Positions 1 through 18,335 are shown, numbered from the stretch's first letter. The stretch: 64,000 nt of DNA from Epithemia pelagica (GCA_946965045.2 OX337238.1:868001-932000), one strand, 5' to 3'. Program-made: numbers and translations. Notes: generated by a model from the letters alone, not told the origin.

Positions 1-2
1 AA

Positions 3-270
3 GTGCTTGAATCGACCTATTATGATGGAACAAAAAGGAACTATACCTACGAAAGGTATATTGAGTCACTTCAGAGGGCCTTTACGGACCTTGAGTCTAC
101 AGGCAAAGTGGTCAGTAATGAAAGAAAAGTGAGAGTTTTACTCTTAGGGGTCGCTGATTCCAGGTTGGAGAGTGCTAAGAATACGATATTGGCCACTCCT
201 GCTTTGAGGGCAAATTTTGAGGTGGCTTCAAACTATCTTGCTGAAGTCCTTGACAGCAAAGTGTTGTATA
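3..270 (+). pseudogene. gag: Outer Ty1/copia element, gag 5' portion (begins before the window; interrupted at 270 by the DNA transposon)
   Basis: Gag-like reading frame (YDGTKRNYTYERYI...KVRVLLLGV...NFEVASNYLAEVL). Removing 271-18335 joins it in frame to 18336 (..DSKVLY|SATTRKARISS..), which runs on into a copia pol. Confidence 0.8.
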
Positions 271-323
271 CAAGCTGAGTTCAAGCGGAATGTCAACGAC
301 GTAGCGCTTGGTAGAAATTCTAC
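271..323 (+). repeat. Left terminal inverted repeat (modular, 53 bp)
   Basis: Versus the reverse complement of 18281-18333: 13/13 match, 9-bp spacer, 12/12 match (TCAACGACGTAG), 6-bp spacer, 11/13 match. Confidence 0.88.
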
Positions 324-874
324 GTAAAAGCGCCTGCCATCCTCTTAATATAGCCCTTCTAATTATGCCTCTACCATTCTACCAAAAATCGACCATGGTG
401 AACGGTCCTTTTGACCGATCTCTTGCCACATAGGAGACGGCTCCGTAATCCCATGCGTCGAATCTCTTCTTCATACATTGGTTGAGCATGGGGAACGTTA
501 GTTGCCTTGTATTCTTGTTGTAGGTGTTGTTTTATCTAGTTGAAGGTTGTCGGCGCGTGATTTACCACGGCAAATTACGGCAAAACTTCGGCGCAACCAA
601 TGCACCTCTATCGTAGAATCGAATCATAGAAGATAGAACAAAGACTATGAATATTTGTAGTGTTGTTCACTTCAAAAATGGCACTCTTTGCGTAATATAG
701 ATGGAACTAAGACTAGAAGTTGCGTCGTTCACAGCGAAGAGGGATGTTCTTTTCGTTGTTGTGACTCACACAGCCGTACCACCGGTAAACGCAACTTATC
801 ACAGCTATAGAATTAGGAAAGATCCTACTTGTACATACTCGAATGATAACCTTAAAACACTAGTAAATAGTTAA

Positions 875-1483
875 TCACTTGTCTTGTGGATTGAAGAAGA
901 GGTTTTGATGAGGGTACTTGACCATGATCGAACCAAGCGAAATGTTGAAACGATCCATGTCATTGCAGCCCATGTAGATTGTGACAACCTGGGGCTCCAT
1001 GCACGCTTTAGGGGTGATGGAGCAGCGTGTGTAGAGGCGGAAGCGTCCCGTGACTTCTTCGTTCTTGCTCGTCTTTCCGAAGACCTGGTCCAAATGCGAC
1101 AGAGCGATGAACCCAACTGGAATAACCAACGCTGGTTCCTCATGCTCTTTCGTTGCATCCCGGTGGAACATTGCAATCCGAAGGTAGTCAGTCGAGAGCT
1201 CCCGCTGGACAAGCAGATGGCCACGGTCAACGATGTTGGTTCCAGTGTCCGCGCTTCTCGACATGGGTCCAAGGAGCGCACAAACGTTTCTTGCGTAGAA
1301 CGAACACTTGAAAGGAAGACCGAAACCACCCTCACGGTCGTCCTCTTCATTGAACTCGAACTTCTTCTTCCCTGCGATGGCCATCTTCGCGTCTTGTCTC
1401 TTCTTCCTTGCCTCTTCCTGTCGTCTCTGTTTGATTGTTCTAGATGATGATGATGACGGCGGGTGATTCGGAAGCTGCTTCAT
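875..1483 (-). CDS. Transposon cargo ORF A, hypothetical 202-aa protein with basic N-terminus
   Basis: ATG-initiated ORF with a K/R-rich N-terminus (possible NLS) followed by a globular-looking region. No family recognised. Confidence 0.55.
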   Translation of the reverse strand: MKQLPNHPPSSSSSRTIKQRRQEEARKKRQDAKMAIAGKKKFEFNEEDDREGGFGLPFKCSFYARNVCALLGPMSRSADTGTNIVDRGHLLVQRELSTDYLRIAMFHRDATKEHEEPALVIPVGFIALSHLDQVFGKTSKNEEVTGRFRLYTRCSITPKACMEPQVVTIYMGCNDMDRFNISLGSIMVKYPHQNLFFNPQDK

Positions 1484-1529
1484 GCTGCAACTTTATTGTG
1501 GCGCGCGCCGATATTGTTCACGAATGAGC

Positions 1530-2312
1530 TGTTAGAATTCTCACCGTCTATGGTGGTTAGATTCTACATCTCATCGATTCCCCATGTCACATAGCCTCGT
1601 GCTATCGCACCATGCCCTCTAGCTTCGAGCTATGTTTCCTAGCTTCGCGCTATATCGACCTATATTTCTTCGCAAATCATGAAAAGTGAGAATAGATTGA
1701 CGAACTCACTCTCAAGACTAAACTGGGTCGTGCGGTATTACAACGGACATAAATTTGGCCGTTGCTCGGACATTATACTAACGCCCTAAGCATACGCGCC
1801 CGAAATCATCGAGCGCACCCAAGCGACATCCGAGCGCTATCGGCATCTATCCGATCCAACGGTCTAAGTATCCCAAGCACGACACACGATCACGCGAGAC
1901 CATATTTCCATTCCCACAATCTCCAAATTGTCAACAAGCTGCGCGCCATGAAAACAACTATGCCAACCCAAAGCAAGAGCTGTTGACCCTGTATATGTTA
2001 TCCGCCCACATATACATGTCATATACATCACATGAATCAACTCCAACTATTCCAAACCTGTTGCCGCCAAGAACCTATGACACATGACCCTTGGCAGGAC
2101 CGAACATTTCACGTAGACCTATCGTAGTAATCAACACACAATCTAACAATATCACCATTTATCACATCCTCTTTTGTGTCCCGACTATCCTTCTGATAGA
2201 CTTCGACTTGCTTGCTTCTCTGACCCTGAGAAGCTTGTATCGGTTGGTGACCTACCTGATTGTCTGCTCTACCGAGCATCAATGTCCCTACGATTCAGAA
2301 AGAATTGTAACA
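1530..2312 (+). repeat. 5' LTR
   Basis: TG...CA termini. No difference from 9131-9913 seen on visual comparison. Confidence 0.97.
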
Positions 2313-2323
2313 GATTAACAGTC
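2313..2323 (+). promoter_or_regulatory. Candidate primer-binding site complementary to a tRNA-Asn(GUU) anticodon arm (half-tRNA priming)
   Basis: GATTAACAGTC directly follows the LTR. Its reverse complement GA-CT-GTT-AA-TC has the form of tRNA positions 30-40 with anticodon GTT. No canonical TGG PBS is present. Confidence 0.6.
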
Positions 2324-2348
2324 TCAAAGCTTATTTCCTTGTGGTTTC

Positions 2349-3128
2349 ATGGATACTAACGAGATTATCACTCCTGTACGACAGATCTATCGAGCCAACC
2401 TGCATCCCGGGCAGCCCGATACCCTGGTGCAGCAGGAACTGGTGCCGACGCCGAAGGCAGCCAACACATCGGTCAACATCTCCGTCGACAGTTCCAACAG
2501 CAACCCATTCGAGACTCCAACCCAGCCTCACGCTCCAATCCCTGCGCCGTTGCTTCGGCCCCCGAGTCCGCCTCGTCGGCTCGTCCCTTCTCGATCCCGT
2601 CGTACCACCCGGTTGATTGCTGATCATATCAAGTACTTCCGCCAACCAACTTGTTCGACCTTCGATCCCGAGATCATTCGTGGGGAGACCCAGATCGAAC
2701 GCCAGTTCCAATCGGTGACCCACATCGTCGACCAAGAAGACATTGACCGTCTGAACGACCAACTTCATCGTTCTCCGAGGCGTCGCCTCATCTTTGCCGC
2801 CCTCTCGGGCAACCCCATCCGTACTGTCCACCTCCGCTTCCTAACCTTCGAGCGCCCAACTGGATACTACAATACCATCCACGTCGTGAACACGACGACT
2901 TGCCCTCTGCCTCCTAACGTTGTACGCCTAGATAACTACGTTGCCTACATCCACGAGGTCCATACCATCGAGGACCATCGTGCAACTATCTACCCTTTGC
3001 GTGCCGAGGTCGAGAACCACCTGGCTGAAGGTGATTCCCCTTCTTCTGTTGCTTGTGCTGCCCCATCTGAGCCTGGAAGCGACTCTGATCATTCGGAAGA
3101 GGGTGAGGATTCGGAGACCGAAGCTTAA
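2349..3128 (+). CDS. Additional 259-aa ORF between the 5' LTR and gag-pol
   Basis: ATG 37 nt after the LTR end. Pro-rich N-terminal half, acidic tail, no recognised domain. Confidence 0.6.
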   Translation: MDTNEIITPVRQIYRANLHPGQPDTLVQQELVPTPKAANTSVNISVDSSNSNPFETPTQPHAPIPAPLLRPPSPPRRLVPSRSRRTTRLIADHIKYFRQPTCSTFDPEIIRGETQIERQFQSVTHIVDQEDIDRLNDQLHRSPRRRLIFAALSGNPIRTVHLRFLTFERPTGYYNTIHVVNTTTCPLPPNVVRLDNYVAYIHEVHTIEDHRATIYPLRAEVENHLAEGDSPSSVACAAPSEPGSDSDHSEEGEDSETEA

Positions 3129-3448
3129 TTACTCATAGTTAACTCCCGTCCTCTCAAAACCTTTCCAAGACTTAAACTCAACGCACATCCGGGTACCCTT
3201 GGTCGCACAACACGCCACACATTCCCGTCAAATCGCGAAAATTCGGCGAAAATTTGTTGAAACTCGGCGAAAATTTGTCGAAATCAACGGAAATTTCCAG
3301 GAGTCGCACATCACAACACACATCCGGGTATCACATACGTGGTACATACGTGGCACACGTGGTACATCCGGGTTCACATCACATCACACATTAAATAAAC
3401 CACATCACACCGCACATTAAATAAACATCGAACCAACCAAATAACACC

Positions 3449-6400
3449 ATGGATCCTCAATCACCCAAGACACCTACGACTCCTAAGGGAGAAGATAACC
3501 AAGACAATGTCTCGGACACAGACCTATTCGACCACATCATATTTACTGTCTGCCAATTCTTCACCAAAGAAAGGGCCGACTACTTAATGAAGTGGATGAA
3601 ATACCATGGTTTTGAGAACATTACTCATGTTATCTCGTATATGCAAACTAATACCGAGGAATCCATGAAGGAACTGACACAATACAAGGTCAACAAACAG
3701 ACACATGATCTACAAGGCCCTACAAGACAGCAGATCAAGCTCTTGGCTTATTGGGCCACATACAAGACCAATGAAATTCAAGACGAGCTATCCAATAGCG
3801 ACTGGATGAACCTAACGAGGAAAGAGTTCAACACTTGGAGGATCAACACAGATTTCTCTAAGGGACCACCTAGCCAAGTCTCAGTCTCGCCAATGAAGTC
3901 ACCGTCATCTGTGAAATCTGTCAGCACAGTTACTGCCGCATCCCAATCTCAACAAGACCTTACAGCATTCAGAAAGGGAACTAAGCGCGACGCAACTGCA
4001 TATGAGGTATTCAAGGATGAACGATACTACGATTCATTCTGGCGTGTATTCAAGACTACAGCTAAGGCTCAAGGCCTATCCAACGTTCTGAATTTCAAAT
4101 ACACACCACCCCATGATGATGAATATGCCGAAGAACTTTTTCAAGAGCAACAAGTATTTCTTTACTCCGTTCTTGTCCGTATCATTCAGACTGATCAAGG
4201 TCGAGCCTATGTACGTGAACATGAACATGATGAAGATGCGCGTGCCGTATTGCAGAAGTTACACTCTTTGCATACCGAATCCGACCTAGCAAAGCGAGAA
4301 GTCCTCCGCTTAACCAACTACATTTCCAATCTACGTCTTGACGACACATGGCGCGGAACAACACGTCAATTTCTTCTACACTTTCAAGAGCAGCTACGTT
4401 TGCTAGACAATTTAGTGACATTGTCTGATCGCATCCCTGATCATACCAGGATGACCTTCCTCATGCAAGCTGTAGAAAAGGTACCTGATCTCCGCCGAGT
4501 CAAGATCTTGGATAATGTGGTGAACACCAAATCCGGTGCAAAATCCCTTTGCTATCAATCATACTTCCGTCTCCTTCTAGACGCAGCTTATGACCATGAT
4601 CAAGCAACCCAGTCATCTGTTCAAAGTCGCCGTCGACATGTCAAACAACATGAATCACTATATGGCCAAGATACAGATGCTGACATAACCTCACAAGATG
4701 ATATGGAGTATCATGTCCACAACACCAAAGCGACATCTGACTCTCCATCCTCTTCATCTAAGGTTAGTCTGCCGCGTGACCTATGGTTCAAACTTTCTGA
4801 AGAAGATCGCAAGTTGATCATTGAGTATAACAAGATGATTCAAGCACCTTCATCAACAACACCGAGGACAGTGCAAACACATGCCCTCGACATTGATCCG
4901 GAACCTGATCCTGACCCCAACCAAGTTGCATCTGATGACGACTCACCTGGCGTAGTCCCTGAGCATTCAGATGATTCAGATCCGGTTACACAATTTATCA
5001 ACCAAGCCATGACGACTGATATCAATCACCCGGTAACTGACCTGACTAGTGTTCTTTCTAACGCCAAGTCCAAGACAAGCAAGAAGGTTACTTTCAAAGC
5101 CAACATGCATAAACAAGCAGGACATGTCCCACGCTATCTGTTTTCCAGGAAATCTACTTTACCAGGGAATCAATTGATTGACCGTGGTGCTAATGGAGGA
5201 CTTGCTGGTTCTGACATGCGCATCCTTTCTAAGACTGGCCGTCATATCACTATTGTGGGTATTGATAACCATGAACTTACTGGACTTCCTGTCGTCACAT
5301 GTGCCGCAAAGTTTGAGACCAATGATGGACCTATTGTCGGCATCTTCAATGAATATGCTTATTATGGGAAGGGCTTATCTATCCATGCTCCTGGTCAATT
5401 CGAGCATTTCGGACTTGCTGTTGATGAACGATCTGTTAAAGTTGATGGTAAACAACGCATCACTACACTTGATGGTCGTGCCATACCCCTTCACATCAAG
5501 GATGGGTTAGCCTACATCCACTCCTTGGGTATCCCCAGCGACGATGACATGGATACCTTACCTCAGATCATCTTCACGTCACCCGACACATGGGATCCTG
5601 GTGTTCTGGACCATTCGTATTCTCCCACACCCTCTGACAATGATCCTGATTGGAAACACGTCAAGACTGATGGTAGTATGTCGAACCACCCATATGACAA
5701 CTATGGGGAGTATACTGATCGTGTTGTTTGTAACCTCAATCTCCTTTTGGATCTCCCATATGATCATGGACCTGACGACGCACCCTTCTTTTCTATCTAT
5801 GCTGACGCAGAAGGTAATGATCCTACACTTCATGCCTCTGTCCACCGTCGTTACCAGGAAGCGTATGACTGGAAGAAGTTCCGTCCATTCTTTGGTTGGC
5901 AATCTGAAGATGTTATTGCCGACACGTTCAAGCACACTACACGTAATGGTAGCATTACTTTTGACCACGACACCCTCAAGAAACATTTCAAGGCTCGCAA
6001 TCCGGTCCTTAATATACCTCGACGTCATGAACCCGTTGCTACTGACTCGGTTTTCTCCGACACCCCTGCTGTTGACCATGGCGGTAAAGTCGCACAAATC
6101 TTTGTTGGTCGAGATACTCTGGTTACTGATATCTATGGGATCAAGTCAACCAAACAGTTTGTCAATACTCTTCAGGATAACATCCGGTTTCGTGGTGCCA
6201 TGGAGACTCTTATCAGTGATGGTGGTTCATCTCTCATCTCTCAAAAGGTCAAAGACATTCTTCGCACTTTGCTTATTGGGGAGTATCGATCTGAACCTTA
6301 TCATCAACACCAGAATAAGGCTGAAAACCGTTATCAGACCGTTAAACGTATGACCAACGCTCTCATGAATGCCACTGGTTGCCCTGCCAACACCTGGCTT

Positions 6401-9136
6401 CTTTGCCTTGAGTATGTCTGTGACTTATTGAACCATACGTCATCACCCACCCACTCCGGTCGCACTCCTCTTGAGGCTCTCTCCGGACGCCCACCCGACA
6501 TTACTCATCTCTTGTTCTTTCCTTTCTGGGATGAGGTTTACTACCGTGTTGACCCCGCTGAACCCACTTCCGGTTCTTATCCATCTTCTTCTGATGAGAA
6601 ACTTGGCCACTGGGTTGGTTTTGCTCACAACGTTGGTGATTCTTTTACTTGGAAGATTCTCACCCAGGATCACCAGATAATCTACCGTTCTGCCGTTCGC
6701 CGTGTTGAATCCACTACACCCAACCTCCGTGTGGATCGACCTTCAGGGGAGGATTCGTCTGAGAAGGATGACAATGATAAGCAAGCTGACACTGTCTTCA
6801 TTCGCAGTGATAGTGAAGATCCATCCAAACCAATGCCCACGATCGATTTTGACGACATGATAGGACGCACATTCCTATGCGACACAGAAGAAAATGGGGA
6901 GCGACACCGTGCACGTGTCATCAAACGAGTCATTGATCTTAATGAAGAAGCGACGAAACAGGAAGAACGTGTCAAGTACATCTACCGAAAGACAAATTCT
7001 GATGTTGATGAGATGATATCCTATAATCAACTCATGGAGTATATCGAACGAGATAACCAAGCTCAAACCTCTGGAGATAATCTTTTCAGGTTCAGGGATG
7101 TCATTGCCCATCAAGGCCCACTGAACACAACTGATCCAGATTACAAGGGGAGCAAATATAATTTGCTTGTTGATTGGGAAACTGGGGAGACTACCTATGA
7201 ACCTTTATCACTCATCGCCAATGATGATCCGATCACTGTAGCAATTTATGGAAAGAAACATGGTTTACTCAACGAACCTGGATGGAAGCATTTGAAACGT
7301 TATGTCAAAACAAGCAAACGCCTCATTCGAGCAGCCAAACAGTCAAGGATTAAACAAGTTCACCATTCCGTCAAGTATAAGTTTGGATTTCAAGTACCAC
7401 GCAATTATGAGGAAGCTGTCGCTCTTGATAAACAACATGGCAACACAAAGTGGCAGGATGCAACAGAATTAGAATTGTCACAAATCCAGTCCTACAAGAC
7501 ATTCAAGGATTTTGGGAAAGCCATCTTCATTAAAGGGAAAGTATCCAATGCACCTGAAGGATATCATAAGATACGTGTGCATCTTGTCTTTGACGTAAAA
7601 CATGATGGACGACATAAAGCAAGACTTGTCGCAGATGGACATCTCACAAAAGAACCTGTTGAGACAATCTATTCAGGTGTTGTTTCCATTCGCAACCTCC
7701 GCATTGCCTTATTCCTGGGTACTTTGAATGACTTGGAAATATGGGGAGCAGATATTGGAAATGCATATCTGGAAGCCTTGACAGGGGAGAAAATTTTCAT
7801 TGTCGCAGGACCTGAATTCAAGGAATTAGAAGGTCACATCCTGATTATATACAAGGCACTTTATGGATTGAAGTCATCAGGCGCACGCTGGCATGATGTC
7901 TTATTCGATGTTTTGACAGACATGGGATTTTCACCAAGCAAAGCAGATCCGGATATCTGGATGAGGAAAGCACCTGGAGAAGACTGTTACGAATACATTG
8001 CCGTATACGTTGATGACTTAGCCATTATTTCTACTGATCCTGGGAATATCTGCAAGATCCTGAAGGAGAAATACAACTTCAAACTCAAAGGAGATGGACC
8101 TATTGATTTCCATTTGGGATGTTGTTACACCAAGGATTCTGATGGAACATTCGTAGCAGATCCAAGACGCTACATTGGTAAGATGATGGACACTTTCGAA
8201 CGAATCTTCAAGGAGAAACCCAAGAAAGCCAAAACACCTCTTATTGGTGGAGACCATCCTGAATTGGATGATTCTGAGCTCCTTGATGAAGAAGGTACTA
8301 GCCATTTCCAAACTCTGATTGGACAACTCCAATGGGTGATCACTATTGGTCGTTTCGACGTCTTCACCGCTACAATGACGCTATCACGCTTTCGTGCTGC
8401 TCCGAGGAAAGGACATCTTGATAGAGCCAAGCGTATCTATGGATACCTTGCACATCTCCCAGAAGGCGCAATCAGATTTAGGATTGGAGAGCCTGATTAT
8501 TCAAGTCTTCCTACCCAAGAATTTGATTGGACTCGCACTGTCTACTCGAATGCAAGTGAACGTATTCCTGAAGATTGCCCAACACCTCTTGGCCGCTATG
8601 TTACCACAACTCATTATGTTGATGCCAATCTCATGCATGACATAGTCACTGGTAAATCCGTCACTGCTGTTCTACATTTGTTGAACGGAACACCTATTGA
8701 CTGGTACAGCAAGAGACAGAGCACGGTGGAAACTGCTACCTATGGATCCGAGTTTGTGGCTGCAAGGACAGCAATAGATCAGATTACAGAATTACGACAT
8801 TCTCTCCGCTACCTTGGAGTACCTATCCGAGAGCGAAGTTACTTGTACGGAGATAACAGATCTGTTGTGCTCAATGCAACCGTTCCTCACTCCATACTAT
8901 CCAAGAGACACCATCTTCTGTCATACCACCGAGTTCGTGAAGCCATCGCAGCAAAGTATGTTGCATTCTACTGGAAAGATGGAAAGACCAACCCTGCCGA
9001 TATCCTTAGCAAACATTGGGATTTCGTATCTATTTGGCCCATGCTCAAGCCATTGTTGTTTTGGAAAGGAGAAGTTCAAGATCTCAACAAATCCAATGAT
9101 GACAAGGTTGAAACGACGAGTTGTGGGGAGTGTTAG
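3449..9136 (+). CDS. gag-pol: Copia Gag-Pol polyprotein (gag-PR-IN-RT-RNaseH), 1895 aa
   Basis: Protease LIDRGANGG; integrase TDSVF..SDGG..AENRY; RT KARLVADG, DIGNAYL, YVDDL; RNase H YVDAN..YGSEF..ADILSK. Integrase precedes RT (copia order). The stop codon lies in the first 6 nt of the 3' LTR. Confidence 0.97.
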   Translation: MDPQSPKTPTTPKGEDNQDNVSDTDLFDHIIFTVCQFFTKERADYLMKWMKYHGFENITHVISYMQTNTEESMKELTQYKVNKQTHDLQGPTRQQIKLLAYWATYKTNEIQDELSNSDWMNLTRKEFNTWRINTDFSKGPPSQVSVSPMKSPSSVKSVSTVTAASQSQQDLTAFRKGTKRDATAYEVFKDERYYDSFWRVFKTTAKAQGLSNVLNFKYTPPHDDEYAEELFQEQQVFLYSVLVRIIQTDQGRAYVREHEHDEDARAVLQKLHSLHTESDLAKREVLRLTNYISNLRLDDTWRGTTRQFLLHFQEQLRLLDNLVTLSDRIPDHTRMTFLMQAVEKVPDLRRVKILDNVVNTKSGAKSLCYQSYFRLLLDAAYDHDQATQSSVQSRRRHVKQHESLYGQDTDADITSQDDMEYHVHNTKATSDSPSSSSKVSLPRDLWFKLSEEDRKLIIEYNKMIQAPSSTTPRTVQTHALDIDPEPDPDPNQVASDDDSPGVVPEHSDDSDPVTQFINQAMTTDINHPVTDLTSVLSNAKSKTSKKVTFKANMHKQAGHVPRYLFSRKSTLPGNQLIDRGANGGLAGSDMRILSKTGRHITIVGIDNHELTGLPVVTCAAKFETNDGPIVGIFNEYAYYGKGLSIHAPGQFEHFGLAVDERSVKVDGKQRITTLDGRAIPLHIKDGLAYIHSLGIPSDDDMDTLPQIIFTSPDTWDPGVLDHSYSPTPSDNDPDWKHVKTDGSMSNHPYDNYGEYTDRVVCNLNLLLDLPYDHGPDDAPFFSIYADAEGNDPTLHASVHRRYQEAYDWKKFRPFFGWQSEDVIADTFKHTTRNGSITFDHDTLKKHFKARNPVLNIPRRHEPVATDSVFSDTPAVDHGGKVAQIFVGRDTLVTDIYGIKSTKQFVNTLQDNIRFRGAMETLISDGGSSLISQKVKDILRTLLIGEYRSEPYHQHQNKAENRYQTVKRMTNALMNATGCPANTWLLCLEYVCDLLNHTSSPTHSGRTPLEALSGRPPDITHLLFFPFWDEVYYRVDPAEPTSGSYPSSSDEKLGHWVGFAHNVGDSFTWKILTQDHQIIYRSAVRRVESTTPNLRVDRPSGEDSSEKDDNDKQADTVFIRSDSEDPSKPMPTIDFDDMIGRTFLCDTEENGERHRARVIKRVIDLNEEATKQEERVKYIYRKTNSDVDEMISYNQLMEYIERDNQAQTSGDNLFRFRDVIAHQGPLNTTDPDYKGSKYNLLVDWETGETTYEPLSLIANDDPITVAIYGKKHGLLNEPGWKHLKRYVKTSKRLIRAAKQSRIKQVHHSVKYKFGFQVPRNYEEAVALDKQHGNTKWQDATELELSQIQSYKTFKDFGKAIFIKGKVSNAPEGYHKIRVHLVFDVKHDGRHKARLVADGHLTKEPVETIYSGVVSIRNLRIALFLGTLNDLEIWGADIGNAYLEALTGEKIFIVAGPEFKELEGHILIIYKALYGLKSSGARWHDVLFDVLTDMGFSPSKADPDIWMRKAPGEDCYEYIAVYVDDLAIISTDPGNICKILKEKYNFKLKGDGPIDFHLGCCYTKDSDGTFVADPRRYIGKMMDTFERIFKEKPKKAKTPLIGGDHPELDDSELLDEEGTSHFQTLIGQLQWVITIGRFDVFTATMTLSRFRAAPRKGHLDRAKRIYGYLAHLPEGAIRFRIGEPDYSSLPTQEFDWTRTVYSNASERIPEDCPTPLGRYVTTTHYVDANLMHDIVTGKSVTAVLHLLNGTPIDWYSKRQSTVETATYGSEFVAARTAIDQITELRHSLRYLGVPIRERSYLYGDNRSVVLNATVPHSILSKRHHLLSYHRVREAIAAKYVAFYWKDGKTNPADILSKHWDFVSIWPMLKPLLFWKGEVQDLNKSNDDKVETTSCGEC
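9125..9130 (+). promoter_or_regulatory. Polypurine tract
   Basis: GGGGAG immediately before the 3' LTR TGTTA. Confidence 0.7.
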
Positions 9137-9913: not shown

Positions 9914-10019
9914 TGAGCGCCGGGGGGAACACGAGATGACACAAGAATGGAGACTGAACCCAACGATTCAAACGAACACAACAATCAAACCAACCAATCC
10001 TCACTTTTATTTTCTAACG

Positions 10020-10893
10020 ATGCGCCAGACTCGTAGTGCTACCAAACGAGCTGAATCTGCGAAGGAGCAGGATTCCGCCGCAGCTCCTTCCAGCAAAACC
10101 GCATTTCCCTCCGACAAGGGAAACGGCAAGAAAATGCCTTCAAAGAAGTCTGTGGAGAACAAAAAGGCGAAGAAGAAGAAGACGATGACGACGAAGTCTC
10201 CTGCTTTGACCAAGAGGCAAGTCACGTTCAACCTTGAGGATGCTTCGTTGTGGAAAGAGCGCGCCAAACAGTGGCAACTCACCATTGGGGATGAAGATGG
10301 TATCCCAGTGTTCTTCGTCAGCAACAAGGACGTCGAACGCGCTAACCTGTCGGATATCGCGGCAGAGCTCCTTGCGATCGAGGCTGTCGGCAAAGAAGGT
10401 AAGTTTGATTGTTCATTGTTGGCTTTGAGTCTCCCTTTCTCACGATGCGCACTCTGCTGCCACAGACACCAAGCCCAACAGCAAGCCCGACAACAAGCCC
10501 GAGAAGGAGATCAAGAAGGAGGACAACATCGAGAACAAGACTCCAGAGTCTTATGTGACCCCGAAGAAAGTAGCTTCTTCCCCAAAGGTGGAGTCCCGAG
10601 CTTTTGCTTTGACCCCCTCCCAGAAGCATGCCTTCCAACGTCAGATTGCAGAAGAACAGGTGAAGGAAAGTGGAGCGACAGACCCTCGCAAGATTTTGAA
10701 TGAATCGCTGGCAGTTGGAGAAAACATCCCCTCCTCACCTCCGTTGTTCTTTAACAATCCATCCCGTGCTTACCGGACATCCATTGATTTGTATGCCGAT
10801 GATGGATTTCTCGAAACCCAAGAAGACTTCATCGGTACGCAGCACAACAGTTTCGGCCCCGAGTACTTGGATCATGAGGACAAGGCGTACTAG
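10020..10893 (+). CDS. Transposon cargo ORF B, spliced hypothetical protein (~268 aa; exons 10020-10398, 10466-10893), Lys-rich
   Basis: A 67-bp GTAAGT...CACAG intron joins ORF 9936-10703 to ORF 10555-10893 in frame (KE-D-TKPNSK). Contains polybasic KKAKKKK. Confidence 0.65.
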
Positions 10894-11419: not shown

Positions 11420-14266
11420 CTAAGTTTGATCGGCTTCTTTGCTCGCGATCTTCTTACCAGGTTTATAATTCGCGGCCACAAGCACCTTACGAGGATTGTC
11501 ACTTAGGACGCAAACACGCTTGTCCCCGACCCAAAGCTTAACCCCAACGAGCCCACTTCGGCAAACACCAGGGATGTCTTTGTCATGGAAGTAGTAGTCG
11601 GAAAGCCTGCTTTCTCCAGAAGGAAGGTTGTAGGTGTTCTTTGGCATGGGATCGTGAACGGTCCCATCTTTTCCTTGGTACACGTAGAAATGTGCACGTG
11701 GATTCCCCATCTCCCCAGTCTTAAAGCCACCAGCATGGACAGTATCTCCTCGAACGAGGAGAAACGTGCCATATGGGATATGTACCACTTTACCCAGCTC
11801 GTTCATATAATCCTTGTGCTTCTCACCGCGGAAACTCCACAATTCAACGGACATACCCTCCTCCGCCAGGGGCATGAAAACAATAAAAGGCATGCGTTCC
11901 CGGAGTGGCAGATCTGCATTTGCTCTCCGAGTCTTTTTGATTGGTTGCTTCCCGGAGGGCGTTTTGGGACCTTCGGACATGTTCCCTGTTACGCTCTGGA
12001 ACAAGAAGTCGATGTGAGGTTCTTGAACTTTTGCCTCTGTGGTCTTCATGAACGAAAGGTGAATGTTGATTTGGTCCGCAAATGAATCATCTTTTGCGTA
12101 GTTCATCCCATAGAGAGCTGAGGCAAGCAACTGCTTGAAATTGGCCGTGACCTTTGCAGCATGTTCGGGGTTAACGTGGCCGAAGTACCGAATGTTGGAC
12201 ACCATTCCCTCATGTTCCATCATTGCCATCAACAAATTTGGTGTGTAGTCTTGAACAGATTTGAAAAATTTGCCCTTTCCTTTCTGGTCCAAGCCTGTGC
12301 TGTACCACGCATTCTCCAACATTTCGAGGAGATCTGGCGGAGTTGTCAAAAAATATCCTCGATACATTTTGTTTTCAATATCGTACAGCCATTTGAAATA
12401 CTTCGAGCGCAATTCTCTATGTAACAACTTCATTTTCTCGAAACGCTCATTCTCCTTCGCTTTCGCATCGATCGCTTCCATCTCCTCAAAAATACTATCC
12501 GTGTCATCTTCTGCCATTACCACTGGTACGAACATTCCAGTACTAGGGCTGGGATTGGCTTGAGTGGCGGGTTGAGCTTGTGCTGCAGGTAGGACGGGAC
12601 TGCTGGGAAGGAGCTCGGGTTGAGCTTGTGCTGCAGGTGGGATGGGATTGCTCGGAAGGAGGTGGGGTGAGCCTTCGACCGGCTGGGTCGTGCGTTGTTG
12701 TTGCTGCTGATGATGGAGCGATGAAGGTAGAGTCCCCCCGTAACCTCCATAGTTGGGTTGATTGTAGGACGGAGGATGTCCATGGTACTGCGGCGGAGGA
12801 TGACTCGTCGGAGGATGAGGATAATGCGGCGGAGGATAAGGATAATGCGGCGGAGGATGATGATTGTACTGCGGTGGAGGGTAATTGTACTGCGGCGGAG
12901 GGTAATTGTACTGCGGCGGAGGATGGTGATAATATTGCGGAGGATAATGCGGCGGCAGCTGAGGGGGCGAATTGTAGTGCTCAGAAACGTATTGCGGAGG
13001 AGGCGGAGAAGGAGGACGAGCAACAGTAGCAACTGGACGGAAAACAGTAGAAGGAGAAGTAAAGACAGGCTTCTTTGTCTTTTTCCCGTCGTCTTCATTT
13101 TCATCATTGGGTCGACTGCGTTTCTTTCCCTCGTCTTCGTCGTCACCTTTCGTCGACGTTTGGATGACCTGTTCGGAGGACGTCGGCGATTCGTCCGTAA
13201 GGTTATAAAACAAAGACAGCTCGTCGCCCGGCTCAATATTTTTGATTGCCTTAACTAGAAGATTTGGCATGATTCTCACGTTGTAACCGTCGTCCGATTC
13301 ATCCGGTGGATTGTCTGTACCGTACAGATGGTGTTGGTGGTCGTTGATTAAGTGCAGCGCCATGCCGAAGTGATCGTCGTTGTCTGCTTGAAGCCTTCGA
13401 TTGTCACGTCCGAACTGAATCGCGTACTCGTTGGGTACAACTGTCCGAGACGTGACGTCGTTTCCTGTGTACGCGCCAATCACTTCACCATCGTTGATTG
13501 TCCGAACTGCAAAGACGCCAAACCCGGCGCCTGGGAGTTTTGACTCCTTCACCTCAAACAGAAGCACTTTTCCAAGGTAGATTTTGACTACCGGATTGTT
13601 CGCCAATGTGTAACCGACATGCTTGCCGATCGGGAAGGTATTTTTTCTGTTCTTCTGCACAGGGAGACCCATTCCACTCGAAAGTGGCACAATCTTCCCC
13701 TTTTGCAAGCCTGAACCGGGCTTCCGAATTGGAGCTTCTTGGACCGTAAAAGTGGCCAAAATCTTCCGTGAGACATACTCTCCCATAGCACAGGCAAGTA
13801 CAGCACTGTCTTTGATCTTGGAGAGCGTCTTGAGGCCTTCGGTGAAAGTCCTGATTGGATCCCGTCCAGAACGAGAAGGGAGTTTCTCCACTTCCTCGAC
13901 GCCTTTCTTGTAGTCCGCTGTGCGCGTATCGGTGAGGAGCTGCCGCATTTGAGTGTCCGAATACTGTTTGCTGTGGTCCTTCTCTGGATGGCCACGCCGA
14001 ATATCTGCAAGCTTTTTATCCTTCACTTGGGCAAAGTCTTGATCCGAAAGAAACCGATGGTGCTTTGTTGTTGTCGCTTCGTCTGTTGCTGCTGCTTCGG
14101 GCGCTGCGGCTGCTGCTACTTCGGGCGCCGCTGTTACTGCCGCTGACGGCCCTTCCGCTGCATCTATTGCAAGTAGAAGAGCGTTAAGATTTCCTTGGTC
14201 ACTCATGCTGTCTCGTTTTTGAGCACCCGCTTTTGAAGGCTGTTTCTTTGGGCTTGGTTTCCCCAT
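11420..14266 (-). CDS. Transposon cargo: SET-domain + Pro/Tyr/Gln-rich linker + 2OG-Fe(II) dioxygenase-like (PhyH-like) fusion protein, ~948 aa
   Basis: SET motifs GAGFGVFA, IGAYTG, LHLIND, IEPGDELSLFY (~13200-13560). Dioxygenase-type ligands EPHID (HxD, ~12010-12025), GDTVHAG (distal His, ~11730) and NPRAHFY (~11690). The open frame extends upstream to 14335. Confidence 0.8.
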   Translation of the reverse strand: MGKPSPKKQPSKAGAQKRDSMSDQGNLNALLLAIDAAEGPSAAVTAAPEVAAAAAPEAAATDEATTTKHHRFLSDQDFAQVKDKKLADIRRGHPEKDHSKQYSDTQMRQLLTDTRTADYKKGVEEVEKLPSRSGRDPIRTFTEGLKTLSKIKDSAVLACAMGEYVSRKILATFTVQEAPIRKPGSGLQKGKIVPLSSGMGLPVQKNRKNTFPIGKHVGYTLANNPVVKIYLGKVLLFEVKESKLPGAGFGVFAVRTINDGEVIGAYTGNDVTSRTVVPNEYAIQFGRDNRRLQADNDDHFGMALHLINDHQHHLYGTDNPPDESDDGYNVRIMPNLLVKAIKNIEPGDELSLFYNLTDESPTSSEQVIQTSTKGDDEDEGKKRSRPNDENEDDGKKTKKPVFTSPSTVFRPVATVARPPSPPPPQYVSEHYNSPPQLPPHYPPQYYHHPPPQYNYPPPQYNYPPPQYNHHPPPHYPYPPPHYPHPPTSHPPPQYHGHPPSYNQPNYGGYGGTLPSSLHHQQQQQRTTQPVEGSPHLLPSNPIPPAAQAQPELLPSSPVLPAAQAQPATQANPSPSTGMFVPVVMAEDDTDSIFEEMEAIDAKAKENERFEKMKLLHRELRSKYFKWLYDIENKMYRGYFLTTPPDLLEMLENAWYSTGLDQKGKGKFFKSVQDYTPNLLMAMMEHEGMVSNIRYFGHVNPEHAAKVTANFKQLLASALYGMNYAKDDSFADQINIHLSFMKTTEAKVQEPHIDFLFQSVTGNMSEGPKTPSGKQPIKKTRRANADLPLRERMPFIVFMPLAEEGMSVELWSFRGEKHKDYMNELGKVVHIPYGTFLLVRGDTVHAGGFKTGEMGNPRAHFYVYQGKDGTVHDPMPKNTYNLPSGESRLSDYYFHDKDIPGVCRSGLVGVKLWVGDKRVCVLSDNPRKVLVAANYKPGKKIASKEADQT

Positions 14267-14675
14267 GGTCGAAACGCAAAACTCAAAACACGAAACACAA
14301 GAAACACGAAACGCAGCACTCTCCTCAGCCCACATACCAAAAACAAAATCTTGAGCTCACAAACTAAAAAACGGGAAAGTTTTTGGTATTTGGGCTGAGT
14401 TACTTAAGGAGTTTTGCGATACGTGCGCGCTTTTGGAGAGGGGGGCGTGTTTTCGCGCAAGGTGTGCTCCGAAAATCGTCCATTCTTCTCGGTTGCGCAC
14501 ATTTTCGATCTATTTACAAACTGAGAATCGAACACGCAACACGAGCACACGAGCACACAACACGGAAGTGATCATTGATACCACTAACTGACAAGGATTA
14601 CATTCAATATAATGGATTAATCGCATGAATAGTTCAGTAACATGTATATAGATGATAAATAGAGATTATTGTAGA

Positions 14676-17600
14676 TCAGGTCTCTTCTGCACCTGATCCT
14701 TGCGTTTCTCTCCAGAGACGTGAGATGAAGCCATGGTCTTGGTCGAGGGCGGATCGGTGACACTTGATTGCTTTTGTCATCTTTTCAATTTCGTCATACG
14801 AGAGGCCCGCAGTTGAATAGTCTCTGTTGGTGGGATTTTGGTCGTACAACAAGTACGCGAGCATATAGCGACGTGCCTTTCCTGACATTTTCCGCACGAT
14901 TTCAGGTGTCGTCTTCTTCAGGCTCGCTGTCAAACATTGCAAAAAGGCAGCTTTGTCTTTCTTCTCCTTCAGTGAGAAAGCGCGAAAGACATTTTTTGAG
15001 TAACCCCAGCAATACTCAATCCCCTCACCAGCCATCTCGCAATGATACTTGGTCGATACCAGAATCTCGATCTTGCAACGATGTCGCTCAGACAAGTCTT
15101 CCGCCAACTTCTCCATTGCAGATTTTTCATTTTTAAAATCAGAGCATTCGCTCATCAGCCGAACCAGAGAGTACTTTTTGTAATCCGCCTGACAGGCTTC
15201 TTTCACAGTCTTCCTATCCTGTTCCAACCATGCATCTCTGGTTGTCTTGACGTACTTGATCATGTTTTCAGGGTCAATCCACCCCCTCTCCCATAAAACT
15301 TGAAACAGTCCTTTTGCAGCATTCATCCAGCCTTCGTCGACCATATCATCTTCAATCGTTGTTGCAATGTTGGAGCGTTTACAAAGGTCCTGTAGTTCAC
15401 TAGTATTTTTCGATTGAAACGAACGTTGCATTCCAGGTCCCATGACCTGGACAAGTTTTGCCATGAGCTCCTTCTTTGTGAGGTTGCGAATCTTCGTTGT
15501 ACCAGTTCGGTATGTATTCTTCGATGCAACACGCTGTGCGTCATTGAGACGACGTCCTTTTTTAGCAACTGGACCACGATCGTTCTCCTGATAGACAAGG
15601 TGTTGCACGTCACCAACTCGTAGTTTGTCGTCATGGTTGTACGGGCCAAGGCAACTTTCATCCAGGATTTTCGTGTCACGCATGCTGGGAACAGCTCCTC
15701 CCCAGTTGTTGTTCATATTCAGAGCATTCAACCCATCAGATCGATGTTTTCCATGACCACTGCTTTGGTCGAACAAAAAGACAAAGTCATGCGCGGGGAA
15801 CATGACCACGAGGCAATCGACAATGTCCTCCAACTGCAAGGCCATGTGGTCGTAGCACCAATATCCCTCTTTGTCTGCTCCGTAATCAAAAAAGCGAGTG
15901 AAGGGTTTTGCGTTGGTAATTGGAGTCTTGGCAGTGTGGCCATTGAGGCGCATTGCAACCTCCGTAGAGATGTATGTGTTGTGTGTTGGACGTAGATGGA
16001 GTTCATTGATCTGAAATAGCTGCGCATCAAGCAATGGGTTTTCGTCCATAAGGATGCCCCATGATCGGCTAACAAATGCGCTGATCATCATCCCATGTCC
16101 ATCATCCTTTGGCAACATTTTTGTTGCACCGTCTTTAGTGTACCACGCCTTGGACGAGAACGAAAACTGCTTGTAGATCGATTCGTCTTGTCCGATAAGG
16201 ATCACGGGCTTGCGGTCCGAAGGGAACCTGTGTGACAAGTTCCCATTGTGAATTTTGTTTTGGGGCTTGATGTACCGTTCAAATTCGCTGGGGAAGGCAT
16301 CGATATGGTACTCCCGCATCTAAGTGCCTGTTGTTGCGTCAGTGTATTCAAATACGAAGCTGTCTGGTAGGAGCTTCTCGTTGCCAGCATCCCCTTCGTT
16401 TTCAAGTTTGATTGCCTCCTCGACAGGGAGTTGCACCCACCGATATGAGAGCTCTTCCCACTTAAAGTACCTCTTGACAAAATCAGCTCTGTGGGCGACA
16501 TTCTCAGCGCTTTCGTGTCGATCGGTGAAGTATGTTTTCGTGTGTTCCTTGAACACCAACCCTGCAGCGGCAATGCAGCGCCATGCTGTGCTATGGGAAA
16601 TGGTCGACAGCTTCAACGAGGCCAGGAAATCTTCGTTCGACAATGGCCTTGCGTTGTTATCGATGCACTCTTGTGTGACCATGGCATACATTTCTGGAAT
16701 CAAGGTGTTCTTCAGGTACACGAGAGCGGACTCTGTTGTTAGAGTGCTCAGATTTTCCTTTGCCCAGCATTCAAACTTTTCCTTCGCTTCAGGCAAGTGA
16801 ACAAAAATGTAGGGCGATGCCTCTTTTCCAATTTGAACTTGATAGTTTGGATGAGGGAAACAGTCGAAAGCCCGATAGTACCTGTGCCAACGAGCAACGG
16901 TGTGCGGGTGTCTTTTTACTGATGCACCATAAACTGCTTCCATTTTTTTAACGGCTTCCTCTATACAATCTAACCACCGGTGACCATATGGCATGTCCGC
17001 CAATGCTATCTTATAGGAGAGGTGCAAGTACGTCACCTTCAGCTGTACCCTGCTTGTCTGTTCGTGGTTAAGTGGGAAGGCATCTGCATTGTTAACCACC
17101 TTCTGCATTGTTTCCAAGCTGAAAGGGGCCTTCCCAAGGATGTCTATCCATCGTTCAAGGTTTCTTTTTACTGATCCTGGAGAATTTTTCTTGCCAGCAA
17201 AGAGTCCAGACATCCTTCCGGAATTAAAAAACGCTTCCTCGTCTACGTTCTGGTACTGTGCTAGACTTCCGCTCGGCTCATCCTCCAAAGCTGTAAAACC
17301 AATACACAAACTCCGTGAATGAACAACATTGACTTTGTTTGTGCCCAATTCGGCAGGTTGGATTGCTGCAACATGTACCTGATTTGTGTTGTTGTGTGAT
17401 GGCGACATTTCCATTGCGGTGGTGCTGTCGACGATTTGCAGTGCTGGCTGTTCATGCTGCTGCGTTGAAGTGTTCTTGATTGCTGGTGGAGTTGAAGTGT
17501 TTCTTGCTTGCTTGGATGTATTTAGCGTGCCTTCACGCAACCCTGGTGACTCTTCGTTCCTTCGCTTCGTTGGCTTCGCTCGTCCCGACCGCCGAATCAC

Positions 17601-18029
17601 ATTCTTGGCTGCAGCCTCCAGCCATTCTTGATGATCGTCCAACATCACTGGCAGGGTTGTTGTGTCTTTAGAGATGTAATAGAATGTGAAGCGTTCCCTT
17701 TTGATCGTATCTCTATAGCGGTAGAAGCCATACTTGTTTGGCTTTTCAACATCATCGAAACACATTGCAATGCTTTTTTCTCTTCGGAAAGCACGGTTCA
17801 TTTCCAGCACAGACAATCCTGGCAACCAAGTGTTCATATATCCTACAAGCTCGACATCTCGGAACCACTTGTTGCAGAATCCAAACACGGTGGGTGAGCA
17901 CTGCTTCCGAAACAGTTCAACAATCTCGTTCCCAGAAAAACTTCGTTCCATCCGAGACTGTGCTGCGTGAGGTGAGTCCGATGATCGTGTCATTGTGGAT
18001 GATGTCGATGCGTTGAACTGTTGCCCCAT
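14676..18029 (-). pseudogene. IS630/Tc1/mariner-like DDE transposase (~1117 codons) split by one in-frame TAG at 16320-16322
   Basis: ORFs 16320-18029 and 14676-16319 are in the same frame (ACT TAG ATG). HTH-like ISHSTAWRCIAAAG and YFTDRHES; catalytic GQDESIY, FLFDQSSGH and KYHCEMAGEGIEYCWG. Confidence 0.85.
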
Positions 18030-18280
18030 TGGGGGTGGTTCAAGTAAACCCTAAAGCATCCGGATGCAGCTCGGCAACAGTTCAACGGGTCTGGGAGGCC
18101 CTCCACCATGGTCGTTAGACAACAAGCGTTTTTTCATCATTTTGGACGGAATTCCAGCGTTCGGAAGCTGTCACGCAACACACTAAAACAAATAAAATAT
18201 TATCCTAAGACTCTGGGAAGTCGCCGGTCGGACACTTTCATTCACTAGTAATGAGAACGCTAGCGAGGATTATTTTTCTG

Positions 18281-18333
18281 GTACAAATTCTACAGGGGTC
18301 TACGTCGTTGATGTACACTCTGAACTCAGCTTG
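18281..18333 (-). repeat. Right terminal inverted repeat
   Basis: Reverse complement of 271-323 in three conserved blocks, followed by TA at 18334-18335. Confidence 0.88.
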
Positions 18334-18335
18334 TA

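What the first reader, a model, noticed from the sequence alone, without database searches (positions are those of the whole stretch)
269..18335. Giant cargo-carrying Tc1/mariner-like transposon (~9.7 kb unnested) defined by TIRs, TA TSD and a restorable target gene
Seen: inverted termini at 271 and 18333, each flanked by TA. Deleting 271-18335 re-creates a continuous gag frame (DSKVLY-SATTRKARISS), so the boundaries are exact. Inside are a transposase and three additional genes (ORF A, spliced ORF B, SET-dioxygenase). Established: TA target duplication is the signature of IS630/Tc1/mariner elements, which are usually 1-3 kb with only a transposase. Inference: this is a large multi-gene DNA transposon family carrying its own accessory proteins, and it may be undescribed.
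Basis: partly seen in the sequence, partly recalled or inferred. Interest (0 to 1): 0.9.

Follow-up and report, generated by a model that had tools for sequence, protein, structure and literature searches.

The report
Four-gene mariner-like transposon in a diatom
This is a real cut-and-paste jumping gene in a diatom, about five times larger than its Tc1/mariner relatives. It always carries three extra conserved genes, one of them a likely chromatin-modifying enzyme. The copy in this window is dead.

Summary
Window 271-18333 is a DNA transposon with inverted termini (13 perfect bases, imperfect to about 55 nt) and a TA on each side. An uninterrupted copy of the outer copia gag elsewhere in the same assembly has a single TA at exactly this site, so the TA duplication and the boundaries are proven.

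Removing a nested copia element (1530-9913, identical 783-bp LTRs, 5-bp duplication) leaves 9,674 bp. Five more TA-flanked copies share the CAAGCTG termini. All four full-length ones share the gene order: a transposase of about 1,100 aa, a SET-domain gene, the two-exon ORF B on the opposite strand, and ORF A.

The transposase matches no Pfam model. Its predicted fold is closest to Mos1, SETMAR and Sleeping Beauty, with about 250 residues between the second aspartate and the glutamate instead of 34-41. ORF A is predicted to have a Ran-binding-domain-like PH fold. The oxygenase half of the SET gene occurs in only one subfamily.

The window copy is dead: a TAG replaces a Gln codon in the transposase, and the copia sits between ORF A and ORF B. 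What the accessory genes do is untested.

This scan had already found the same family on other DNA of this genome (s1-256914, s1-256923). My tests agree with those reports.

The parts
1..268 (+). Outer copia gag, left part, interrupted by the element. It continues at 18336.
   Evidence: 97% identical to residues 281-369 of the uninterrupted 498-aa gag paralogues. There is a weak Retrotran_gag_2 hit.
269..270 (.). TA target-site duplication, left copy
   Evidence: The empty site in L009 has one TA.
271..323 (.). Terminal inverted repeat at the ORF A end of the element. It starts CAAGCTGAGTTCA.
875..1483 (-). ORF A, 202 aa. It has a basic N-terminus and a predicted PH-like (Ran-binding-domain-like) fold. 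It is present in every subfamily.
   Evidence: Alignment. dN/dS is 0.26. The model has pLDDT 77.
1530..9913 (+). Nested copia-type LTR retrotransposon. LTRs are at 1530-2312 and 9131-9913, gag at 2349-3128 and pol at 3449-9136. The 5-bp duplication TGAGC lies at 1525-1529 and 9914-9918. It is inserted in the 147-bp spacer between the ORF A and ORF B start codons.
10020..10893 (+). ORF B, 268 aa, in two exons (10020-10398 and 10466-10893). The 67-nt GT..AG intron lies at 10399-10465. The C-terminal part has a conserved DDGF..TQ motif.
   Evidence: The intron is conserved in L005 and L002. Exon 2 is conserved in L006 and L003.
11420..14335 (-). SET plus oxygenase-like gene, 971 aa. The SET domain lies at about 13202-13525, followed by a Pro-rich linker and a C-terminal domain at about 11423-12358. 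That domain has PHID (12005-12019), DTVHAGG (11726-11746) and RAHFY (11684-11698).
   Evidence: Pfam SET scores 25 bits against a cut-off of 22.4. Atlas feature hits go to 2OG-Fe(II)/PhyH clusters. There is a 96% identical intact copy, P0260.
14676..18029 (-). Transposase gene, 1,117 codons, with an in-frame TAG at 16320-16322 (codon 570, Gln in intact copies). The candidate catalytic residues are D at 16185-16187, D at 15768-15770 and E at 15015-15017.
18281..18333 (.). Terminal inverted repeat at the transposase end of the element
18334..18335 (.). TA target-site duplication, right copy
18336..22555 (+). Outer copia: the rest of gag (to 18724) and pol (18740-22555)

Best explanation
Window 271-18333 is one old, now dead copy of a multi-copy cut-and-paste DNA transposon family of a diatom.

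**What is shown.**
- The element inserted into a TA inside a copia gag gene and duplicated that TA.
- It was later hit by a young copia.
- Its family carries four conserved genes in a fixed order between short inverted termini that begin CAAGCTG.
- The transposase has an RNase H-like DDE core whose nearest solved relatives are Tc1/mariner enzymes.

**What is inferred about transposition.** The transposase of about 1,100 aa binds the termini, excises the element and integrates it at TA. It uses D, D and E residues spaced 138 and 250 residues apart, with a domain of about 230 residues inserted before the glutamate.

**What is inferred about the accessory proteins.** They serve the element, not the host.
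- The SET-domain protein acts on chromatin, either to escape silencing or to guide integration. In the 9.7-kb subfamily it is fused to a 2-oxoglutarate/iron oxygenase-like domain.
- ORF A is a small Ran-binding-domain-like PH-fold protein with a basic N-terminus. It may act as a protein adaptor, possibly for nuclear transport of the large transposase, as the second protein of Harbinger elements does.
- ORF B has no assignable role.

**State of this copy.** It cannot make transposase because of the stop codon. The intact promoter-sharing region between ORF A and ORF B is split by the copia. Its termini are intact.
For: **Boundaries and duplication.**

**Six copies, all 12 ends with TA and CAAGCTG-type termini.**

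| Copy | Coordinates | Length | Notes |
|---|---|---|---|
| window | 271-18333 | 9,674 bp unnested | nested copia removed |
| L005 | 5987-15709 | 9,723 bp | 88.6% identical end to end; all four genes intact |
| L002 | 9656-19492 | 9,837 bp | collinear with the window element |
| L003 | 8304-16669 | 8,366 bp | |
| L006 | 9623-16593 | 6,971 bp | |
| L008 | 9402-11170 | 1,769 bp | deletion derivative in a second assembly |

**Gene set.** It is conserved across the subfamilies.

**Selection.** dN/dS is 0.22 for the transposase C half and 0.26 for ORF A.

**Recent activity.** An identical 1,088-aa transposase is found on 5 contigs. Its 90% cluster has 43 members, and two other subfamilies have 25 and 24.

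**Transposase.**
- Full-length relatives have 1,000-1,100 aa, and the family has 3,428 representative clusters.
- The window's N-terminal ORF aligns to their N-terminus.
- The model has pLDDT 82.
- SETMAR, Mos1 and Sleeping Beauty score Z 11.0-11.7, above integrases at 9.6.
- AlphaFold DB hits named Tc1-like DDE reach E 1e-18.
- Atlas neighbours by shape carry DDE_3 or are IS630 transposases.
- D45, D184 and E435 are invariant, in an HCE.AGEGIEY.W motif that resembles the Tc1 SPDLNPIE..W motif.

**ORF A fold.**

**Chromatin link in relatives.** Some related transposases carry a chromodomain or a SAP domain.
Against: - No sequence profile links the transposase to Tc1/mariner. Pfam, NCBIfam and PDB sequence searches were empty for it and for 51 relatives.
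- The D-D-E spacing is far outside the 34-41 residues typical of the group. The identity of the catalytic glutamate rests on motif resemblance, not on a residue-level structural superposition.
- There is no RNA evidence. The only runs that hold the element look like DNA assemblies.
- The SET plus oxygenase gene shows dN/dS of about 0.8 between the window and L002. The out-of-frame controls score about the same, so recent selection on it is not shown.
- The five ORF A models disagree (pLDDT 77 down to 35).
- The oxygenase fold was not modelled here.
- More distant relatives (Fragilaria L004, metagenome L007) show a transposase without these accessory genes.
Confidence: 0.88

Rival explanations
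1. The three extra genes are passively captured host genes, as in Pack-type cargo, with no role in the element's life cycle.
For: - The oxygenase-like domain is present in only one subfamily, so at least that part is a recent gain.
- dN/dS is about 0.8 for the SET plus oxygenase gene between two copies.
- Capture of chromatin genes by transposons is a known general pattern (bioRxiv 10.1101/2021.11.30.470311).
Against: - SET, ORF B and ORF A keep the same order, strand and, for ORF B, the same two-exon structure in subfamilies whose transposases are only 45-47% identical.
- ORF A has dN/dS of 0.26.
- ORF A was found only in 20 clusters, all on large ENA contigs. None carries a name, and the ones examined lie inside elements.
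- ORF A is retained in the 1.77-kb deletion derivative.
Confidence: 0.15
2. The transposase belongs to a different or new superfamily that merely shares the RNase H fold and a TA target. Under this reading 'Tc1/mariner-like' is a misnomer.
For: - No Pfam DDE_3, DDE_1 or Transposase_1 hit was found in 52 family members.
- The spacing is about DD250E.
- The transposase is three times the usual size.
- Retroviral integrases score only about 2 Z units lower.
Against: - All seven top solved structures are Tc1/mariner enzymes and align across the whole core, residues 1-517.
- AlphaFold DB and Atlas neighbours carry DDE_3 or IS630 labels, and they align through the inserted domain too.
- The motif around the glutamate resembles the Tc1 motif.
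- The TA duplication is the group's hallmark.
- Brown-alga curators file 4.4-kb elements with large transposases under Mariner-Tc1 (PMC12477816).
Confidence: 0.2
3. The region is not mobile: it is a gene cluster or segmental duplication that happens to be bounded by inverted repeats.
For: None beyond the bare possibility. The window holds only one copy.
Against: - A paralogous empty site has a single TA.
- Six copies in unrelated flanks have alignments that stop exactly at the termini.
- Identical transposase proteins occur on five contigs.
Confidence: 0.01

Closest known systems
Tc1/mariner elements (Mos1, Sleeping Beauty, Hsmar1/SETMAR) of the IS630-Tc1-mariner group
   Same: - TA target duplication.
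- Short terminal inverted repeats.
- Cut-and-paste DDE core with the same fold (Z 11.0-11.7).
- An IE..W motif at the third catalytic residue.
   Different: - The transposase has about 1,100 aa, not about 340.
- About 250 residues, not 34-41, separate the second D from the E, owing to an inserted domain.
- No Pfam profile matches.
- The element is 7-10 kb with four genes, not 1.3-2.4 kb with one.
Ciliate Tec and TBE elements, the multi-ORF members of Tc1/mariner (PMC7325037)
   Same: They are Tc1/mariner-type transposons that carry three ORFs, one on the opposite strand.
   Different: - Tec and TBE have DD34E transposases.
- Their accessory genes differ: a tyrosine recombinase in Tec, and a zinc-finger protein plus a small ORF in TBE.
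- Tec has 700-bp inverted repeats.
- They occur only in ciliates.
- None has a SET, oxygenase or PH-like gene.
PIF/Harbinger elements, which need a second, Myb-like protein
   Same: A conserved second protein is encoded beside the transposase. In Harbinger it brings the transposase to the nucleus and to the ends, which is the role proposed here for ORF A.
   Different: - The transposase superfamily is different.
- The duplication is 3 bp.
- The partner is a Myb-like DNA binder, not a PH-like protein.
- The analogy is functional only and is untested.
Fungal KDZ transposons associated with TET/JBP oxygenases, and giant accessory-gene DNA transposons of algae (KDZ, EnSpm, Sola-1; PMC12477816)
   Same: They are large DNA transposons that carry accessory genes. 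These include 2-oxoglutarate/iron oxygenases or DNA methyltransferases thought to act on chromatin or DNA.
   Different: - The transposase superfamilies are different.
- In the Ectocarpus survey the giant, accessory-gene families are KDZ, EnSpm and Sola-1, not Mariner-Tc1.
Human SETMAR
   Same: A SET domain is associated with a mariner-type transposase.
   Different: SETMAR is a host gene that captured a transposase by exon fusion. Here the SET gene is a separate gene inside a mobile element.
RepeatMasker class TcMar-Sagan
   Same: The label appears in basidiomycete and Hydra annotations. These are the taxa of the nearest DDE_3-bearing Atlas clusters.
   Different: No sequence of that class was available, so the link is only a lead.

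Membership tests
IS630/Tc1/mariner group | Duplication of a TA target dinucleotide | tested here: met
   The empty site in L009 has one TA and the window has two. All 12 ends of six copies carry a TA.
IS630/Tc1/mariner group | Short terminal inverted repeats bounding the element | tested here: met
   13/13 perfect and about 55 nt imperfect. The CAAGCTG start is conserved in all subfamilies.
IS630/Tc1/mariner group | DDE/D catalytic domain with the Mos1/Sleeping Beauty type RNase H-like fold | tested here: met
   VIA-align Z 11.0-11.7 to 3f2k, 3hot, 3k9k, 5hoo, 4u7b and 5cr4. AlphaFold DB Tc1-like DDE proteins reach E 1e-18. Atlas neighbours by shape carry DDE_3.
IS630/Tc1/mariner group | Match to the family's sequence profiles (Pfam DDE_3, DDE_1, Transposase_1, HTH_Tnp_Tc3) | tested here: not met
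   No such hit for the window protein or for 51 relatives, even at E up to 1. The PDB profile search was empty.
IS630/Tc1/mariner group | 34-41 residues between the second D and the third D/E (82 in Sailor) | tested here: not met
   D184 to E435 leaves 250 residues between them. The assignment of the E is by motif.
IS630/Tc1/mariner group | N-terminal paired helix-turn-helix DNA-binding domain | tested here: inconclusive
   Only weak HTH_33 hits (E 0.014) in 3 of 33 relatives. The N-terminal half was not modelled.
Tec/TBE multi-ORF Tc1/mariner elements | DD34E transposase plus a tyrosine recombinase or zinc-finger accessory ORF | tested here: not met
   The spacing is 250. The accessory genes are SET, ORF B and a PH-like ORF A. 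The Tec/TBE description is from PMC7325037.
SET-domain methyltransferases (the cargo gene) | Pfam SET domain above the curated threshold | tested here: met
   PF00856 scores 25 bits against a cut-off of 22.4, at residues 271-378. SET hits are also recorded on the L002, L005 and L006 copies. Catalytic activity was not tested.
2-oxoglutarate/Fe(II) oxygenases (C-terminal half of the cargo gene) | An HxD...H metal triad, a downstream Arg, and the double-stranded beta-helix fold | tested here: inconclusive
   PHID, DTVHAGG and RAHFY are invariant in three copies. Atlas feature hits go to 2OG-Fe(II)/PhyH clusters at 0.93 with a low shared-feature count. There is no Pfam, NCBIfam or PDB sequence hit. 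The fold was not modelled here.
Ran-binding domain / PH-like superfold (ORF A) | A seven-stranded beta sandwich capped by a C-terminal helix. For RanBD proper, binding of Ran-GTP. | tested here: inconclusive
   The fold is met. All 50 top chains are PH-like and RanBDs come first (Z 11.5, Foldseek E 5e-4, AlphaFold DB NUP2/50/61 at E 6e-6). However, only one of the five models is confident, identity is 7-15%, and Ran binding is untested.
TcMar-Sagan (Repbase/Dfam label) | Sequence similarity to the Sagan reference transposases | not testable with these tools
   No Repbase or Dfam library is available. Only the label's taxonomic spread was seen.

The most novel reading that the evidence does not exclude
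These elements may represent a deep, unnamed branch of the IS630/Tc1/mariner group. It would have giant DD~250E transposases and be spread through stramenopiles and fungi. In diatoms this branch would have built its own host-manipulation kit:
- a SET (plus oxygenase) enzyme that rewrites histone marks on or around the element, to evade silencing or choose targets;
- a Ran-binding-domain-like protein that hijacks nuclear transport for the transposase;
- a third, spliced partner.

In this reading the accessory genes are required for, or strongly boost, transposition.
Probability: 0.3. Interest if true: 0.8.

Novelty: new variant of a known kind. Interest (0 to 1): 0.64.

Why it matters
Tc1/mariner elements are the textbook minimal transposon: one gene and two short repeats. 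Here a lineage with the same chemistry and target keeps three extra genes under selection and reaches 7-10 kb.

One of the extra genes is a SET-domain protein, which in one subfamily is fused to an oxygenase-like domain. Relatives of the transposase carry chromodomains. Together these point to repeated recruitment of chromatin tools by this lineage.

Intact, recently moved copies exist: an identical 1,088-aa transposase is found on five contigs. Diatoms can be transformed. It should therefore be possible to test directly whether a DNA transposon uses its own chromatin writer and transport adaptor.

The transposase family is also large (3,428 representative clusters) and invisible to Pfam. Standard annotation therefore misses it.

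Tried and rejected
- **Profile and sequence searches of the element's proteins.** Pfam and NCBIfam scans of the transposase, ORF A, ORF B and the oxygenase half gave nothing usable. PDB sequence searches with the transposase profile and with the oxygenase half were empty.
- **Foldseek alone.** It gave only E 0.45 to Mos1. The VIA-align second look was needed.
- **Homologue search with the whole SET plus oxygenase protein.** It returned only one near-identical copy, probably because the Pro-rich linker took up the word budget.
- **ORF A relatives.** The metagenome scan found none. The Atlas feature search suggested a C2 domain at low recognition. I dropped that suggestion in favour of the PH-like fold result.
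- **Sequencing runs.** The three holders look like DNA assemblies, with contigs up to 509 kb. They show the element as short, high-depth pieces. This gave no RNA evidence and no check of the ORF B intron.
- **Gag paralogues for the empty site.** None were found in the window or in the first eight loci. The two gag halves gave no usable Pfam continuity. The exact-cluster look-up solved the problem.
- **Fragilaria locus L004.** It has a related transposase but no recognisable termini or accessory genes.
- **Literature.** Searches for a description of this family, or of 'Sagan', found none.

Full report
**Observation**

The window has a 13-base perfect inverted repeat, CAAGCTGAGTTCA, at 271-283 and 18321-18333. 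The similarity continues imperfectly to about 55 nt. With up to two mismatches allowed, this 13-mer occurs only at these two places in the 64 kb. TA lies directly outside both ends.

Inside the element is a copia-type retrotransposon at 1530-9913. Its two 783-bp LTRs are identical, its termini are TG..CA, and it is flanked by a 5-bp duplication, TGAGC. Removing it and one copy of the duplication leaves 9,674 bp.

**Empty site**

Joining 1-270 to 18336 onward gives a single open frame...AEVLDSKVLYSATTRKARISS....

The gag fragment downstream of the element belongs to a 90% cluster that also holds four uninterrupted gag proteins of 471-498 aa. These read ...AEVLDSKVSYSATTRKARISS.... The two window halves align to them with exactly one bridging residue, the codon split by the insertion.

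The DNA of one such copy (L009, another contig of the same assembly) reads gtgtcgta TA gtgccacc with one TA. The window has TA, then the element, then TA. It proves both the boundaries and the 2-bp TA duplication.

**Other copies**

Using proteins from the element, I fetched further copies.

| Locus | Coordinates | Length | Main features |
|---|---|---|---|
| L005 | 5987-15709 | 9,723 bp | Aligns to the unnested window element from first to last base at 88.6% identity. Holds an intact 1,088-aa transposase ORF, a 967-aa SET plus oxygenase ORF, ORF B and ORF A. |
| L002 | 9656-19492 | 9,837 bp | Collinear at 65-81% identity |
| L003 | 8304-16669 | 8,366 bp | More distant subfamily: transposase 45-47% identical, SET 31-36%, ORF A 43-47%, ORF B exon 2 33% |
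| L006 | 9623-16593 | 6,971 bp | As L003, and intact. Its SET gene has 408 aa and no oxygenase half. |
| L008 | 9402-11170 | 1,769 bp | From a second assembly. A deletion derivative that keeps the termini and ORF A fused to a short N-terminal piece of the transposase. |

All twelve ends are flanked by TA. All begin CAAGCTG, or a one-base variant of it.

Copy numbers are substantial:
- The exact 1,088-aa transposase is on five contigs, and its 90% cluster has 43 members.
- The L006-type cluster has 25 members.
- The L008-type cluster has 24 members.
- The window's own subfamily has only 4.

**Gene models**

- **Transposase.** The two ORFs at 16320-18029 and 14676-16319 on the minus strand are in one frame and are separated only by a TAG. 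Full-length relatives have 1,000-1,100 aa. The upstream ORF aligns to their N-terminal 500 residues, right up to the stop. The TAG aligns with a Gln codon (CAG) in L005 and with Gln in L002. This copy therefore encodes a truncated transposase.
- **ORF B.** It is a two-exon gene on the plus strand (10020-10398 and 10466-10893). Its 67-nt GTAAGT..CAG intron is conserved in place in L005 and L002. The spliced product has 268 aa.
- **ORF A.** It lies at 875-1483 on the minus strand.
- **Nested copia.** It sits in the 147-bp spacer between the divergent ORF A and ORF B start codons.

**Selection**

Between the window and L002, dN/dS is 0.22 for the transposase C half, 0.43 for its N half and 0.26 for ORF A, at dS of about 0.9.

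The SET plus oxygenase gene differs by only dS 0.1-0.24, with dN/dS 0.7-0.8. Out-of-frame controls give similar values. That segment was therefore exchanged recently between lineages, and it gives no evidence of selection at this distance. Its conservation at the protein level in L003 and L006, where the DNA is saturated, argues for older constraint.

**What the transposase is**

Pfam, NCBIfam and PDB sequence searches find nothing for it or for 51 relatives. The only exceptions are weak HTH_33, SAP and, in two relatives, clear chromodomain hits.

An exhaustive HMMER search finds 3,428 representative clusters. The named ones are from the diatom Fragilaria.

An AlphaFold model of the C half (pLDDT 82, pTM 0.78) gave these results:
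- Foldseek matched Mos1 only weakly.
- On re-alignment, the top seven entries are SETMAR, Mos1 and Sleeping Beauty catalytic domains at Z 11.0-11.7, spanning residues 1-517. Retroviral integrases follow at 9.6.
- AlphaFold DB cluster neighbours are mostly named Tc1-like transposase DDE domain proteins, with E down to 1e-21. They align over about 500 columns, including the inserted domain.
- Atlas neighbours by shape and by features carry DDE_3 or are IS630 transposases.

Invariant residues are D45, D184 and E428/E432/E435 of the C half. The motif HCE.AGEGIEY.W resembles the Tc1 SPDLNPIE..W motif, which points to E435 as the third catalytic residue. That gives spacings of 138 and 250 residues.

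Together with the TA duplication, this places the element with the IS630/Tc1/mariner group by mechanism and fold. It fails the group's sequence-profile and spacing criteria.

**Accessory proteins**

- **SET domain.** It passes Pfam's threshold.
- **Oxygenase-like half.** The C-terminal 310 residues have an invariant HxD, a distal His and an Arg. They resemble 2OG-Fe(II)/PhyH clusters by language-model features. I did not model this half.
- **ORF A.** Relatives are found only in 20 clusters on large ENA contigs. Its best model (pLDDT 77, with the other four models worse) is a seven-strand sandwich with a C-terminal helix. All 50 top solved chains are PH-like and Ran-binding domains lead (Z 11.5). 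The best AlphaFold DB hit is a NUP2/50/61 Ran-binding domain at E 6e-6.
- **ORF B.** It is low-complexity apart from a conserved LTP.QKHA...DDGF..TQ region.

**Mechanism**

The cut-and-paste part is well founded. The roles of the accessory genes are inference:
- A chromatin writer and eraser that protects or steers the element. This fits the chromodomains fused to related transposases and the general pattern of chromatin-gene capture by transposons.
- ORF A as a protein adaptor, perhaps for nuclear transport, by analogy with the second protein of Harbinger elements.

No RNA data could be obtained. The runs that hold the element behave like DNA assemblies.

**Comparison with what is known**

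Multi-ORF Tc1/mariner elements are known only from ciliates (Tec and TBE), with different accessory genes and DD34E transposases (PMC7325037).

In the brown alga Ectocarpus, curated Mariner-Tc1 families reach 4.4 kb with enlarged transposases. The giant accessory-gene families there are KDZ, EnSpm and Sola-1 (PMC12477816).

I found no description of this diatom family. Repbase and Dfam could not be searched, and the RepeatMasker class TcMar-Sagan remains an untested lead.

**Earlier notes of this scan**

The same family was already reported on other DNA of this genome. Follow-ups s1-256914 and s1-256923 reached the same reading. My tests were run independently on this window and agree. I did not test their claim that the oxygenase was captured from a host gene family.

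**Verdict**

This is a new variant of a known kind: a deep Tc1/mariner-like lineage with a conserved four-gene architecture. The function of its accessory genes is unknown.

Noticed in passing
L001:1-18625 (start of contig ctg1231l, assembly ERZ21939226): At least three tandem units of 5,689 bp. Each holds one element terminus (CAAGCTGAGTTCA at 896, 6585 and 12274, same strand) and an internally deleted transposase ORF (N residues 1-319 joined to C-half residues 46-279; 551 aa). Each also holds a 119-aa ORF and a 723-aa WW-domain ORF. No opposite terminus was seen. It may be a tandemly amplified chimera or an assembly artefact at a contig end.
   Followed up: partly
window 11420-14335 against L002:13719-16736: The SET plus oxygenase segment is 85-92% identical in DNA between the two copies (dS 0.1-0.24). 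The flanking transposase and ORF A are 64-76% identical (dS about 0.9). This mosaic suggests recombination or gene conversion between subfamilies.
   Followed up: partly
window 14324-14344 / 14379-14399; L002:13654-13673 / 13711-13730: A 20-21-nt near-perfect hairpin (CTCAGCCCACATACCAAAAA and its complement, loop about 35 nt) lies in the spacer between the transposase stop and the SET gene. It is conserved in the window and in L002. No exact match was found in the other loci. It may be a terminator or a regulatory element.
   Followed up: partly
P0241, P0249 (relatives of the transposase; origin unknown): Two related transposases carry a clear N-terminal chromodomain (Pfam Chromo, E about 4e-9). 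Others carry SAP domains. This lineage has recruited chromatin or DNA-tethering modules more than once.
   Followed up: no
L008:9402-11170 (assembly ERZ25042306, ctg3415l): A 1,769-bp TA-flanked deletion derivative in a second assembly. It keeps both termini and a 245-aa ORF made of a short transposase N-terminal piece plus ORF A. Its 90% cluster has 24 members on many contigs. It is a non-autonomous element that still encodes ORF A.
   Followed up: partly
window 1530-9913: The nested copia has two 783-bp LTRs without a single difference and an uninterrupted 1,895-aa pol ORF, so it inserted very recently. With the outer copia this makes three levels of nesting: copia, then the DNA transposon, then copia.
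   Followed up: partly
L007:7522-11342 (JGI metagenome 3300081633): A unit of about 3.8 kb holds only a related transposase (41% identical) between 50-nt inverted repeats. A TA sits next to CAGC termini, but the repeat similarity continues beyond the TA, so the exact ends are unclear. It suggests the single-gene form exists in other organisms.
   Followed up: partly
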